Shown: in pieces, positions 1,740-3,198 of the stretch | Numbering within the stretch: position 1 is the first letter of the stretch | Layout: each line of letters starts with the position of its first letter | Virus record (IMG/VR): IMGVR_UViG_3300032236_000747 | Span: 1-64,000 of that record | Strand: one strand, 5' to 3' | DNA length: 64,000 nucleotides | The notes under the pieces: generated by a model | What the model saw: only the letters and a program-made list of their open reading frames with translations | Databases searched by the model: none | What the model was told of the DNA's origin: nothing | Made by a program: the position numbers and the translations under genes

Positions 1740-1775
1740 TAGGTTATTAACAGCAACATTTTTAATCATAACCTG
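1740..1775 (+). promoter_or_regulatory. Family-A CAGCA stem, minimal copy 3 abutting the RBS of the DUF2828 gene
   Basis: TAGGTTAT..CAGCA(1751)...ATAACCTG directly followed by AAAGGA and ATG 1789. Confidence 0.7.
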
Positions 1776-1788
1776 AAAGGAAACACAA

Positions 1789-3198
1789 ATGAACGCATTT
1801 GTAAACGCAGTAGCAAACCAAGAAGCCCGTACCGCTAACGGTATGAAGGCACGCAAGTCAACTTCTAACAAAGTAGTTGACCTATTTTATAACATCGGTG
1901 CCAGCCGTGGTAAGGATATTGTCCCTGCCTTTGTTGGTGCTTATACAGCAGACAAGAATCTAGCATTGCGTATCGCCCTGTGGGCACGTGATGCTCGTGG
2001 TGGTGCCGGCGAACGTGAGATCTTCCGTTCAATCTTGAAGTACTTGGAAAAGCACGACAAGGATGCTGCATCAGCACTTTTGAAGAAAGTGCCTGAACTA
2101 GGTCGTTGGGATGACATTTTTGTCTTCTCTGACAAGGATCTAAAGGCTCAAGCCTATACTATGTTGGGTGACGCTTTGCGTGCTCAAAATGGCTTGGCTG
2201 CTAAGTGGACTCCACGTAAAGGTGAAGTCGCTCGTGAAATCCGTGAGTTCTTCGGAATGTCACCAAAGTTCTATCGCAAGAGTTTGGTTTCTTTGACCAA
2301 GGTTGTTGAAACTCAAATGTGCGCTAAGGACTGGGATAACATCAACTTTAGCCATGTGCCTAGCGTTGCTTCTGCTCGCTACAAGAAGGCATTCAATCGT
2401 AATACTACAAAGTTCGCTGAGTATGTTGCGGCATTGGTTAAGGGTGATCCAACTGTAAAGGTAAATGCTTCGGCTGTTTACCCTTACGATGTGTTGAAGG
2501 GTATCAACTCTTACAGCAACAACTACAGCAAGACTGAACTTGACCACATTGTGGCTCAATGGGAAGCTTTGCCAAACTTTGTAGGTGATGCTAACATCCT
2601 ACCATTAGTAGACGTTAGCGGTTCTATGAGCTGCCCAGCAGGTGGAAAGTCATCTACAACTTGTATGGATGTTGCGGTATCGCTAGGCCTGTACTTGGCA
2701 GACAAGAACAAGGGCGTGTTCAAGGACACATTCTTGACTTTCTCCGACAAGCCACAGTTGATGACTCTAAAGGGTAACGTGGTTGAAAAGATGAACCAAA
2801 TGGTTAAGTCCGATTGGGGTATGAGCACTAACCTGCATGCCGCTTTCAACCAGATCCTTAACACAGCAGTTAAGAACGAAGTGCCACAAAGTGATATGCC
2901 AGCTATGCTGTTGATCCTTAGTGACATGCAGTTCAATCAATGCGTAAAGCATGATGACTCTGCTATGGAAATGATCGAACGCAAGTATGCGGCTGCAGGT
3001 TATGCTGTGCCACAAGTTGTGTTCTGGAACCTAAACAGTTCTGACAACACACCAGTTAAGTCAGACAAGAGTGGTGCTGCTTTGGTAAGTGGATTTAGCC
3101 CATCAATCATGACTAGCTTGCTAGCCGCTGATTTGGATAACTTCACTCCAGAAGGTATCATGTTGAAGACCGTAATGAGCGATCGTTACGACTTCTAA
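1789..3198 (+). CDS. DUF2828-family helical domain + vWA domain protein (Ro60/TROVE-like architecture)
   Basis: N-terminal RTANG..STSN..DLF and RDARGGAGER motifs, GRWDD, AKWTPR; MIDAS motif DVSGSM, SDMQF, VFWNL, VSGFSP. Confidence 0.85.
   Translation: MNAFVNAVANQEARTANGMKARKSTSNKVVDLFYNIGASRGKDIVPAFVGAYTADKNLALRIALWARDARGGAGEREIFRSILKYLEKHDKDAASALLKKVPELGRWDDIFVFSDKDLKAQAYTMLGDALRAQNGLAAKWTPRKGEVAREIREFFGMSPKFYRKSLVSLTKVVETQMCAKDWDNINFSHVPSVASARYKKAFNRNTTKFAEYVAALVKGDPTVKVNASAVYPYDVLKGINSYSNNYSKTELDHIVAQWEALPNFVGDANILPLVDVSGSMSCPAGGKSSTTCMDVAVSLGLYLADKNKGVFKDTFLTFSDKPQLMTLKGNVVEKMNQMVKSDWGMSTNLHAAFNQILNTAVKNEVPQSDMPAMLLILSDMQFNQCVKHDDSAMEMIERKYAAAGYAVPQVVFWNLNSSDNTPVKSDKSGAALVSGFSPSIMTSLLAADLDNFTPEGIMLKTVMSDRYDF

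What the first reader, a model, noticed from the sequence alone, without database searches (positions are those of the whole stretch)
1740..1791. Minimal CAGCA clamp sits on the DUF2828 ribosome-binding site: likely translational autoregulation
Seen: the shortest copy (36 nt, almost no cargo) ends at 1775, immediately followed by AAAGGA (1776-1781) and ATG 1789. It is co-transcribed with copy 2 from the consensus promoter at 1481-1509. Inference: protein bound here would block the 30S subunit, matching protein level to the supply of partner RNAs, as ribosomal-protein leaders do. This is the strongest internal link between motif and protein.
Basis: partly seen in the sequence, partly recalled or inferred. 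Interest (0 to 1): 0.78.

Follow-up and report, generated by a model that had tools for sequence, protein, structure and literature searches.

The report
RNA clamp guarding Ro-like gene's start
A small conserved RNA hairpin, built like the small RNAs that always accompany a phage Ro60-like protein gene, sits right against that gene's ribosome-binding site, so the protein may throttle its own synthesis; binding itself is untested.

Summary
Window 1740-1775 is a 36-nt hairpin: a U.G closing pair, a 7-bp stem, UAA-CAGCAA and a short loop. Its last base abuts the Shine-Dalgarno AAAGGA (1776-1781) of the DUF2828/DUF7788 gene (ATG 1789).

It is the smallest of five same-strand "clamp" RNAs in 1360-4943. 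Among 60 distinct leaders of relatives (74-87% protein identity), 57 keep a clamp at this spot. They use 8 different stems, each fully compensated, and the SD starts 0-4 nt after the stem in 53 of 57. Sinorhizobium phages (41% identity) have an independent minimal clamp abutting their SD.

A covariance model built without the leader finds it (36 bits, E 8.5e-5) as the only other significant hit in the 355-kb genome. In five whole genomes of distant phages, all 12 hits lie beside the DUF2828 gene.

The predicted protein structure has the Ro60 fold (Foldseek E 1e-8). The clamps therefore look like Y-RNA-like partners, and the leader copy like an operator that mimics them.

Binding and repression were not tested. 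Leaders of FelixO1, LeBron, Listeria and other phages lack the clamp.

The short clamps also match the Rfam model of Dictyostelium Class I RNAs, below its threshold.

The parts
1481..1509 (+). Sigma-70 consensus promoter (TTGACA, 17 nt, TATAAT) that would drive copy 2, the mini clamp and the DUF2828 gene
   Evidence: 12 of 12 matches, and no terminator-like site before 3322. Co-transcription is inferred.
1531..1735 (+). Long-cargo clamp RNA (copy 2): T, AGGATGA, TTG-CAGCAT, about 180-nt cargo, TCATCCT, G, then UU
   Evidence: A homologous long clamp directly precedes the leader clamp in relatives.
1740..1775 (+). Minimal leader clamp (the finding): U.G closing pair, 7-bp stem 1741-1747 with 1768-1774, UAA-CAGCAA 1748-1756, 11-nt rest of loop
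   Evidence: R1 hit 1737-1778, 36.2 bits, E 8.5e-5. Conserved with compensatory changes.
1776..1781 (+). Shine-Dalgarno AAAGGA, starting at the base after the clamp's terminal G
   Evidence: The SD core starts 0-4 nt after the 3' arm in 53 of 57 relatives' leaders.
1789..3198 (+). DUF2828/DUF7788 gene, 469 aa, predicted Ro60-fold (helical TROVE-like ring plus vWA) RNA-binding protein
   Evidence: Pfam; PHROG 850 'RNA-binding protein'; AF2 pLDDT 90.5; the 12 PDB matches with E <= 0.001 are all Ro60 or TROVE chains, and they are the top 12.
3322..3348 (+). Terminator-like hairpin closing the transcription unit
   Evidence: 10-bp stem followed by a T-rich tail. A consensus match only.
1360..1463 (+). 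Clamp RNA copy 1: T, GGGATG, ATTA-CAGCAA, cargo with a T-arm-like GGGTTCGAGTCCC, CATCCC, G, then UU
   Evidence: The T-arm likeness is by eye; there is no Rfam hit.
4532..4587 (+). Short free-standing clamp RNA (copy 4), 56 nt
   Evidence: Matches Rfam RF01414 (Dictyostelium Class I RNA) at 33.8 bits, E 0.0023 in the 10-kb scan, below the gathering score of 41.5.
4773..4943 (+). Long-cargo clamp RNA (copy 5): AGGATCG, GTT-CAGCAA, cargo, CGATCCT, G, then UU
   Evidence: Relatives' versions reach very high word depth in freshwater metatranscriptome contigs (a weak measure).

Best explanation
The 36-nt element is a cis-acting copy of the signature shared by a family of phage small RNAs. That signature has three parts: a terminal 7-bp stem closed by U.G/AG..CU, an adjacent single-stranded NNN-CAGCAA, and a 3' G. 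These RNAs are the likely Y-RNA-like partners of the Ro60-fold DUF2828 protein.

The copy sits at the 5' edge of the DUF2828 ribosome-binding site; the stem ends at -14 from the AUG and the SD begins at the next base. It most likely serves as an operator. When the protein exceeds the supply of free clamp RNAs, it binds its own leader and sterically hinders 30S binding. This would be negative translational feedback by target mimicry.

Shown here: the element, its family membership, its conservation and covariation, its fixed position against the SD, the exclusive genomic pairing of clamps with DUF2828 genes, and the Ro60 fold of the predicted protein structure.

Inferred: that the protein binds the clamp, that binding blocks initiation, and that free RNAs compete with the leader.
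For: The anatomy is exactly as described.

Family membership. R1 was built from 28 other clamps of 9 lineages and finds the leader copy at 36.2 bits, E 8.5e-5, as the only significant non-training hit in 354,680 bp.

Structure. The terminal stem shows compensatory changes in 7 of 7 pairs under RNAalifold. In the pair count, 95.9% of cells are paired, against 30-41% when the partner columns are slid. G.U pairs and a strand bias of 233 against 6 show it acts as RNA on the gene strand.

Conservation at the RBS. 57 of 60 distinct leaders of 74-87% relatives have the clamp in fixed register, with 8 stem types. G follows the stem in 56 of 57, the SD core starts 0-4 nt later in 53 of 57, and the ATG lies 11-17 nt later in 53 of 57.

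The clamp stays with the gene. In L010 and L076 a consensus promoter lies 5-7 nt before the leader clamp, so the clamp would be the 5' end of the mRNA. Minimal forms with a loop remainder of 10-17 nt arose in several sub-lineages while the stem and CAGCA(A/C) were kept. Sinorhizobium phages (41% identity) have the same layout independently: promoter, minimal clamp, G, AAAAGGA.

Leader clamps differ from free ones at the 3' edge. Free clamps end CUG-UU in 142 of 161 cases. Leader clamps do so in 6 of 74; there the SD takes that place.

Link to the protein. In five whole distant phage genomes (595 kb), all 12 R1 hits at E <= 0.1 lie within about 1.2 kb of the DUF2828 gene on its strand. T4, which has tRNAs but no DUF2828 gene among the tblastn matches, has no hit better than E 0.54.

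The protein. AF2 gives pLDDT 90.5 and pTM 0.90. The top 12 PDB matches are all Ro60 or TROVE chains, with TM-scores of 0.43-0.64 (best pair 0.64/0.58) and E from 1.6e-8 to 2.4e-5. The cargo of one LeBron clamp matches Rfam YrlA at 39.8 bits.
Against: There is no binding or expression evidence. The complex prediction was not run by the tool, and the metatranscriptome contigs give no RNA ends.

The layout is not universal. Leaders of FelixO1, LeBron, Ci1 and Ochrobactrum OC lack a clamp, and in Listeria and Bacillus phages the last clamp ends 70-90 nt before the ATG.

In 66-73% relatives the element ahead of the RBS is often a full-size cargo clamp with the free-type CUGUU end and 8-15 nt to the SD. 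That also fits a compact operon in which the gene simply follows the last RNA gene.

The hairpin alone is weak (-5.1 kcal/mol). The SD itself is not paired, so any block depends wholly on a bound protein.

As far as I know, no autoregulation is described for Ro60 proteins.
Confidence: 0.45

Rival explanations
1. Last RNA gene of the array, with no feedback. The element is simply the smallest or a decaying member of the clamp RNA array. It is co-transcribed with the gene and cut off during maturation. Its position against the SD reflects operon compaction, with the mRNA 5' end created by 3' processing of the clamp.
For: In 66-73% relatives the pre-RBS element is an ordinary long-cargo clamp with the CUGUU end. 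In FelixO1 the clamps lie between tRNAs, where RNase P or RNase Z processing would release them. In FelixO1 and LeBron the clamps lie downstream of the gene, so the order is flexible.
Against: A decaying copy would not keep the stem by compensation across 8 stem types, nor keep an invariant CAGCAA. Leader clamps form a distinct class: they are short (median 56 nt against 155) and lack the UU of free clamps. The SD offset is held at 0-4 nt. The clamp stays with the gene when the promoter is moved directly in front of it. The minimal form recurs independently in Sinorhizobium phages.
Confidence: 0.25
2. Positive cis element. The protein-bound 5' stem protects the DUF2828 mRNA from 5'-end-dependent decay, or its A/U-rich loop enhances initiation. 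Binding would then raise rather than lower expression.
For: In L010, L076 and the Sinorhizobium phages the clamp would be the very 5' end of the mRNA, the position of known 5' stabiliser hairpins (established knowledge, for example the ompA leader). Ro60 stabilises the Y RNAs it binds (established knowledge). Relatives' DUF2828 transcripts have high word depth in metatranscriptome contigs (weak evidence).
Against: In the window and most relatives the clamp is internal to the transcript, 150-270 nt or more from the promoter. A generic stabiliser would not need the CAGCAA signature. The stem ending 0-4 nt from the SD is a geometry typical of repressors.
Confidence: 0.15
3. A DNA-level or generic signal: a promoter, a terminator, a protein-binding inverted repeat, or a chance hairpin.
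For: TTAACA-16-TAACCT inside the element is a weak promoter-like string (8 of 12 matches, by eye). By energy alone the hairpin is not unusual.
Against: Compensatory changes keep the pairing, not the hexamers. G.U pairs work only on the + strand RNA, and the strand bias is 233 against 6. No T-run follows the stem. The asymmetric CAGCAA lies on one side only. The covariance model hit is significant genome-wide.
Confidence: 0.03

Closest known systems
Ro60 (Rsr) with Y RNAs / YrlA in bacteria and mycobacteriophages (Chen et al. 2014, PMC4201824)
   Same: The predicted protein has the Ro60 fold. The partner RNAs are closed by a stem joining their 5' and 3' ends. They are encoded next to the protein gene on the same strand, and several copies occur per locus. 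Some cargos are tRNA-like; the LeBron cargo matches YrlA at 39.8 bits. The loci neighbour tRNA genes and RtcB or RNA ligase genes.
   Different: By sequence the protein is DUF2828 plus DUF7788, not Pfam TROVE, with 12-17% identity to Ro60. The RNA signature is a plain 7-bp stem plus single-stranded CAGCAA, not the conserved bulged Ro-binding helix (recalled, not tested). No clamp reaches the YrlA gathering score. A leader copy at the RBS is not described for Ro60.
Dictyostelium Class I RNAs (Rfam RF01414; Kjellin et al. 2021, PMC7919456)
   Same: Both have a terminal stem of 6-7 bp beginning with (A)G, followed by an unpaired motif ending in CAGCAA (Class I consensus CCUUACAGCAA), a variable A/U-rich body and a 3' end CUGU, at 42-65 nt. 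All three RF01414 hits in 77 kb of phage sequence fall exactly on clamps: 33.8, 23.7 and 23.1 bits.
   Different: All hits are below the gathering score of 41.5. The phage RNAs have no DUSE promoter. Many phage clamps carry cargos of 100-250 nt. The only named Class I binder is the RRM protein Rnp1A. Whether Dictyostelia encode a DUF2828 protein could not be tested. Convergence is not excluded.
Translational operators that mimic the regulator's main RNA target (E. coli thrS operator, ribosomal-protein leaders such as S8 or L1, T4 gp43 operator hairpin, MS2 coat protein operator)
   Same: A copy of the protein's RNA target sits at or next to the SD of the protein's own mRNA. The copy is a reduced version of the real target. 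The expected logic is competition between the free target and the leader. This comparison rests on established knowledge.
   Different: Repression is not demonstrated here. The stem ends just 5' of the SD rather than enclosing the SD or AUG. The regulator would be a Ro60-fold protein, for which no such loop is known.
Phage T4 stable RNAs rnaC and rnaD in the tRNA cluster
   Same: They are small stable RNAs of unknown function, encoded among phage tRNA genes and matured with them.
   Different: They show no clamp signature. The best R1 hit in the whole T4 genome has E 0.54 and lies elsewhere. T4 was not among the phages with a DUF2828 match.

Membership tests
Clamp RNA family defined here (DUF2828-associated RNAs) | Terminal 7-bp stem joining the 5' and 3' ends, supported by covariation | tested here: met
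   1741-1747 pairs with 1768-1774. Relatives' leaders show 8 compensated stem types. Across the family, 7 of 7 pairs are compensatory.
Clamp RNA family defined here (DUF2828-associated RNAs) | Unpaired NNN-CAGCAA directly 3' of the 5' arm, and a G directly 3' of the 3' arm | tested here: met
   TAA-CAGCAA at 1748-1756 and G1775. R1 scores the element at 36.2 bits, E 8.5e-5 genome-wide, without its having been in the training set.
Clamp RNA family defined here (DUF2828-associated RNAs) | 3' flank UU after the terminal G (CUG-UU) | tested here: not met
   The leader copy has CUG-AAAGGA. Free clamps have UU in 142 of 161 cases, leader clamps in 6 of 74. This marks leader clamps as a sub-class.
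Ro60 / Y RNA ribonucleoprotein | Protein with the Ro60 architecture: helical TROVE ring plus vWA/MIDAS domain | tested here: met
   AF2 pLDDT 90.5. The top 12 PDB matches are all Ro60 or TROVE chains, E 1.6e-8 to 2.4e-5, aligned over the full length. The same holds in Swiss-Prot models. By sequence it is only DUF2828 plus DUF7788; the profile search against PDB gives Ro60 at E 0.3-0.5.
Ro60 / Y RNA ribonucleoprotein | Partner RNA matches a Y RNA / YrlA model at the curated threshold, or carries the conserved bulged Ro-binding helix | tested here: not met
   No window clamp hits YrlA. The LeBron cargo reaches 39.8 bits against a gathering score of 69. The stem is a plain helix followed by CAGCAA.
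Ro60 / Y RNA ribonucleoprotein | The protein physically binds the RNA | not testable with these tools
Needs gel shift or RIP.
Dictyostelium Class I RNA (RF01414) | Score at or above the Rfam gathering threshold of 41.5 bits | tested here: not met
   The best phage clamp (4534-4587) scores 33.8 bits. The leader copy 1740-1775 gives no RF01414 hit even when scanned alone.
Dictyostelium Class I RNA (RF01414) | Stem beginning with G, then an 11-nt motif ending CAGCAA, and a CUGU 3' end | tested here: inconclusive
   The architecture and the CAGCAA core are shared, and free clamps end CUGUU. The first five motif positions differ, and the leader copy ends CUGA.
Dictyostelium Class I RNA (RF01414) | DUSE promoter about 60 nt upstream; restricted to Dictyostelia | tested here: not met
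   These are phage loci with sigma-70 promoters. The paper reports the class only in Dictyostelia.
Autoregulatory translational operator by target mimicry | The operator resembles the regulator's primary RNA target | tested here: met
   The R1 model of free clamps detects the leader copy and the Sinorhizobium leader copies. This holds only if the clamps are the protein's target, which is inferred.
Autoregulatory translational operator by target mimicry | The operator overlaps or abuts the ribosome-binding site, and does so conservedly | tested here: met
   The stem ends at -14 and the SD starts at the next base. The offset is 0-4 nt in 53 of 57 relatives.
Autoregulatory translational operator by target mimicry | The protein represses translation of its own mRNA through the operator | not testable with these tools
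   Needs reporter fusions and toeprinting.

The most novel reading that the evidence does not exclude
DUF2828/DUF7788 proteins and the stem-plus-CAGCAA clamp RNAs form a second, so far undescribed Ro60/Y-RNA-like ribonucleoprotein system. It is very widespread in tailed phages: 706 phage records, and 6,244 protein clusters at 50% identity. Dictyostelid Class I RNAs, abundant RNAs whose function has stayed open since 2004, would be the eukaryotic version of the same partner-RNA class. That predicts they are bound by a Ro60-fold or DUF2828-type protein. The leader clamp would then be the first autoregulatory operator known for any Ro60-like protein.
Probability: 0.25. Interest if true: 0.9.

Novelty: new variant of a known kind. 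Interest (0 to 1): 0.78.

Why it matters
DUF2828 is one of the commonest "RNA-binding protein" annotations in phage genomes, yet no RNA partner or function is described for it. Ten full-text searches found nothing on this (for example), and Rfam has no family for these RNAs.

This work gives a concrete, testable partner RNA signature and a covariance model. It also gives a simple regulatory hypothesis: an operator that mimics the partner RNA at the gene's own RBS. That would be a new regulatory mode for the Ro60 superfamily.

The gene neighbourhood holds tRNA arrays, RtcB and RNA ligases in the Listeria phage locus, and PTH2 and RF-1-like genes in close relatives. This points to tRNA or translation repair, or to counter-defence.

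The match to Dictyostelium Class I RNAs turns a long-standing open question, what Class I RNAs bind and do, into a direct experiment.

Tried and rejected
- **CAGCA as the marker.** Rejected. It occurs 253 times in the window, mostly in coding sequence.
- **Loose stem scans.** Stems of 6 bp or more with any spacer gave hundreds of chance hits. They were replaced by a strict pattern with a null model and by a covariance model.
- **Hairpin energy.** Uninformative: z -2.1 for the hairpin alone and -0.7 in context.
- **Nucleotide search of the locus against phage records.** No match. The genome is a metagenome assembly.
- **Rfam at gathering thresholds.** Only tRNAs. A scan of 1355-1740 found nothing for the long cargos. 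A scan of 1730-1790 gave only noise.
- **MAFFT alignment of whole leaders (A1).** It misaligned the 3' arms because loop lengths differ, so covariation was counted in fixed register by script and on alignment A3.
- **Swapped-arm control with G.U pairs allowed.** It was noisy (294 of 1896) because the loops are A/U-rich. I did not rely on it.
- **Profile search of PDB sequences.** Only E 0.3-0.5 to Ro60. The fold comparison was needed.
- **Complex prediction (protein plus leader RNA).** Not folded by the tool. It is no evidence either way.
- **Metatranscriptome contigs.** They show that relatives' genes and clamps are present in RNA libraries, but give no transcript ends.
- **Dictyostelium DUF2828 protein.** This could not be tested. 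AlphaFold DB organism names were withheld, the Swiss-Prot hits include none, and Avesson et al. 2011 is not in the library.
- **Vibrio KVP40-like leaders.** They carry AGACATT-NTA-CAGCAA 8-9 nt before the SD. The only candidate 3' arm lies 79 nt into the coding sequence and does not vary. Left unresolved.
- **Promoter or DNA-repeat reading of the element.** Rejected on the G.U pairs, the strand bias and the pattern of compensation.
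Full report
OBSERVATION. T1740 is followed by a 7-nt arm AGGTTAT (1741-1747), then TAA-CAGCAA (1748-1756), an 11-nt A/U-rich remainder, the complementary arm ATAACCT (1768-1774) and G1775. AAAGGA occupies 1776-1781 and the ATG is at 1789. The ORF 1789-3198 (469 aa) matches Pfam DUF7788 (E 1.9e-50) and DUF2828 (E 1.1e-21), and PHROG 850 'RNA-binding protein'. A perfect TTGACA-17-TATAAT promoter lies at 1481-1509. The first terminator-like hairpin downstream is at 3322-3348. The unit promoter, long clamp 1531-1735, mini clamp, gene is therefore plausible, but it is inferred.

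IS IT MORE THAN CHANCE? Not by CAGCA alone: the pentamer occurs 253 times in the window, largely in coding sequence. Not by folding energy either: -5.1 kcal/mol, z -2.1. Three other tests are decisive.

First, a strict pattern (T, 7-bp arm, 3-nt spacer, CAGCA, complementary arm, G) gives five same-strand copies within 1360-4943. Simulated genomes give about 5.6 hits per 355 kb on both strands.

Second, a covariance model (R1) was built from 28 short clamps of nine phage lineages, without the leader copy. It scores 1737-1778 at 36.2 bits, E 8.5e-5. Apart from its own training sequence, this is the only significant hit in the whole 354,680-bp genome.

Third, comparative data. The window is the start of a metagenome-assembled freshwater jumbo phage. 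I collected 84 loci of relatives at 74-87% protein identity. Among 60 distinct leaders, 57 have a 7-nt arm in fixed register before NNN-CAGCA that pairs with a downstream arm. Eight different 5' arms occur (AGAATGT, AGGTTAA, AGAATGC, AGGTTAT, TGAATGC, AGTTTAG, AGATTAG, AGGTTAG), each with its matching partner. G follows the 3' arm in 56 of 57. The SD core begins 0-4 nt after the arm in 53 of 57. The ATG lies 11-17 nt after it in 53 of 57.

THE FAMILY IT BELONGS TO. The same architecture flanks DUF2828 genes, on the gene strand, in very distant phages:
- FelixO1: four copies between tRNAs, just downstream of the gene.
- Listeria LP-048: three copies upstream.
- Mycobacterium LeBron: three copies downstream.
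- Campylobacter F336: two copies upstream.
- Rhizobium RHph_I1_18: four copies upstream.
- Bacillus Izhevsk: four copies upstream.
- Vibrio 6E35.1a.

On an alignment of 28 short clamps, RNAalifold predicts the 7-bp terminal stem on its own, and all 7 pairs show double-sided changes. The pair count gives 95.9% of cells paired, against 30-41% for slid partners, and none of 500 shuffles reaches the observed covariation score. These sequences were picked by a stem-requiring scan, so the model searches are the less biased evidence.

R1 run over the whole genomes of FelixO1, LP-048, LeBron, F336 and RHph_I1_18 (595 kb) gives 12 hits at E <= 0.1. All lie within about 1.2 kb of the DUF2828 gene and on its strand. 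Ci1 has two hits 10 kb upstream of the gene. T4 was not among the phages with a DUF2828 match, and it has no hit better than E 0.54. In the 84 close loci the strict pattern occurs 233 times on the gene strand and 6 times on the other strand. Together with the G.U pairs, this shows an RNA-level element.

THE PROTEIN. AlphaFold2 on a 47-sequence alignment gives pLDDT 90.5 and pTM 0.90. Foldseek against the PDB returns only Ro60 or TROVE chains as its top 12, aligned over the full length. They include Xenopus Ro60 with RNAs, human Ro60, Deinococcus Rsr and Thermus phage phiLo Ro60, with E from 1.6e-8 to 2.4e-5 and a best TM-score pair of 0.64/0.58. Swiss-Prot models give the same picture. By sequence the relation is invisible: E 0.3-0.5.

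The family is very large: 706 phage records and 6,244 clusters at 50% identity. It has eukaryotic members; one hit is named 'Plant/T31B5-30 protein'. One LeBron clamp carries a cargo that matches Rfam YrlA, the bacterial Y RNA with a T arm and a D arm, at 39.8 bits against a gathering score of 69. Window copy 1 contains a T-arm-like GGGTTCGAGTCCC (by eye). The clamps therefore behave like Y RNAs of a divergent Ro60: a terminal stem, a variable and partly tRNA-like body, encoded beside the protein gene. Chen et al. 2014 (PMC4201824) searched only next to TROVE-annotated genes. None of my ten literature searches found a description of DUF2828-associated RNAs (for example).

WHAT IS SPECIAL ABOUT THE LEADER COPY. 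Leader clamps are a recognisable sub-class.
- They are short: median 56 nt (range 34-70), against 155 nt for free clamps.
- Free clamps end CUG-UU in 142 of 161 cases. Leader clamps do so in 6 of 74; the SD takes the place of the UU.
- Most relatives' leader clamps keep a small inner hairpin (UUUCA..UGAAA). The window's copy has lost it and is a truly minimal form.
- Minimal forms arose several times while the stem and the motif were kept.
- In L010 and L076 a consensus promoter sits 5-7 nt before the clamp, so the clamp would be the 5' end of the mRNA. The clamp travels with the gene, not with the RNA array.
- Sinorhizobium phages phiM19 and phiN3 (41% identity) have the same layout independently: promoter, AAAACGA, CAA-CAGCAA, 12 nt, TCGTTTT, G, AAAAGGA. 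R1 detects it at 22.3 bits, E 0.021.
- In Campylobacter and Rhizobium phages a clamp ends 9-10 nt before the SD.
- Vibrio KVP40-like phages carry arm-NTA-CAGCAA 8-9 nt before the SD, with no clear 3' arm.

MECHANISM. Best reading (0.45): the leader clamp is an operator that mimics the protein's partner RNAs. A roughly 52-kDa Ro60-fold protein seated on a helix that ends at -14, with the SD starting at the next base, should exclude the 30S subunit. Free clamp RNAs would titrate the protein and relieve the block, as in the thrS, ribosomal-protein and T4 gp43 systems (established knowledge).

Shown: the anatomy, the family membership, the covariation, the fixed juxtaposition with the SD, the co-occurrence with the gene, and the predicted fold. 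Inferred: binding, repression and competition.

Against this reading:
- There is no experimental datum.
- The layout is absent from the leaders of FelixO1, LeBron, Ci1, Ochrobactrum OC, Listeria and Bacillus phages.
- In 66-73% relatives the pre-RBS element is often a normal long clamp with CUGUU and 8-15 nt to the SD.

Rivals: the last RNA gene of the array, cut away with no feedback (0.25); a positive 5' stabiliser or enhancer (0.15); a DNA-level signal or chance (0.03).

COMPARISON WITH KNOWN SYSTEMS. The element works like a target-mimic translational operator, and the RNP looks like Ro60 with Y RNA. It is not a member of the YrlA or Y RNA families by score or by helix type.

One further resemblance was not expected. 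The Rfam model of Dictyostelium Class I RNAs (RF01414) hits window 4534-4587 at 33.8 bits, E 0.0023 for a 10-kb scan against all 4,227 families. Its only other hits in 67 kb of distant phage loci fall exactly on clamps: L007 5811-5858 at 23.7 bits and L003 5664-5719 at 23.1 bits. Class I RNAs are described as a 6-bp terminal stem starting with G, an adjacent unpaired 11-nt motif CCUUACAGCAA, a variable body and a conserved CUGU end. They are said to be restricted to Dictyostelia, and their function is unknown. The phage clamps share the stem, the CAGCAA core and the CUGU(U) end. All scores are below the gathering score of 41.5, and A/U-rich loops contribute to them. I could not test whether Dictyostelia encode a DUF2828 protein. 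Membership is not claimed; common ancestry or a common type of protein partner remains possible (about 0.25).

VERDICT. The wider result, a conserved partner-RNA class for the very common phage DUF2828 protein, appears to be undescribed.

Noticed in passing
window 4534-4587; L007 5811-5858; L003 5664-5719: The Rfam model of Dictyostelium Class I RNAs (RF01414) hits phage clamp RNAs, and only those: 33.8, 23.7 and 23.1 bits, all below the gathering score of 41.5. The stem, the CAGCAA core and the CUGU end are shared.
   Followed up: partly
L004 (Mycobacterium phage LeBron) 7528-7649: The middle of three clamps downstream of gp53 carries a cargo with a T arm and a D arm. It matches Rfam YrlA (Y RNA-like) at 39.8 bits, against a gathering score of 69.
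   Followed up: partly
L003 (Listeria phage LP-048) 4469-5020: A ROOL RNA match (90 bits, just under the gathering score of 99.1) lies between the tRNA array and the clamps plus DUF2828 gene. RtcB and an RNA ligase lie a few kb downstream.
   Followed up: no
L006, L096, L097 (Vibrio KVP40-like phages), about 40 nt before the DUF2828 ATG: Right after a promoter the leader carries (A)GACATT-NTA-CAGCAA, 8-9 nt before GAGGA. It has no nearby 3' arm. The only complement (AGTGTCT) lies 79 nt inside the coding sequence and is invariant. It may be a half-clamp, or a clamp that encloses the RBS.
   Followed up: partly
L139-L141, L149, L168, L091 (CCGCAA); L160, L161 (CAGCAC): Some relatives' leader clamps carry variants of the otherwise invariant CAGCAA motif.
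   Followed up: no
window 1200-5200, laid on metatranscriptome runs X7, X15, X16, X17: Contigs of relatives cover the DUF2828 gene and the 4818-4951 clamp cargo at very high word depth (up to about 24,000 in X15). The small ORFs at 3612-4281 are near zero. This suggests strong expression, but it is confounded by sequence conservation and by how contig depth is measured.
   Followed up: partly
window 9422-9521: A 100-nt tRNA-like stretch (Rfam tRNA at 29.6 bits, just at threshold) is not called by ARAGORN. It lies just upstream of tRNA-Thr and tRNA-Arg. It could be a tRNA with an insertion or a tRNA-like RNA.
   Followed up: no
window 844-872, 1481-1509, 3611-3639: Three perfect 12-of-12 sigma-70 consensus promoters lie within 2.8 kb, each ahead of tRNA or clamp units or small genes.
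   Followed up: no
L009, L010, L011 (close relatives), downstream of the DUF2828 gene: Neighbouring genes include peptidyl-tRNA hydrolase PTH2, release-factor-like PCRF/RF-1 fragments, dual-specificity phosphatase-like genes and HD_4 genes. The neighbourhood is related to translation and RNA repair.
   Followed up: no
W06 = Citrobacter phage Ci1 record 65045-65403: In the closest named relative (50% identity) the two R1 clamp hits lie about 10 kb upstream of the DUF2828 gene rather than next to it.
   Followed up: no
L178 (phage T4) 1409-1672, minus strand: The T4 stable RNAs rnaC and rnaD in the tRNA cluster show no clamp signature. T4 as a whole has no significant R1 hit, which makes it a useful negative control.
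   Followed up: yes
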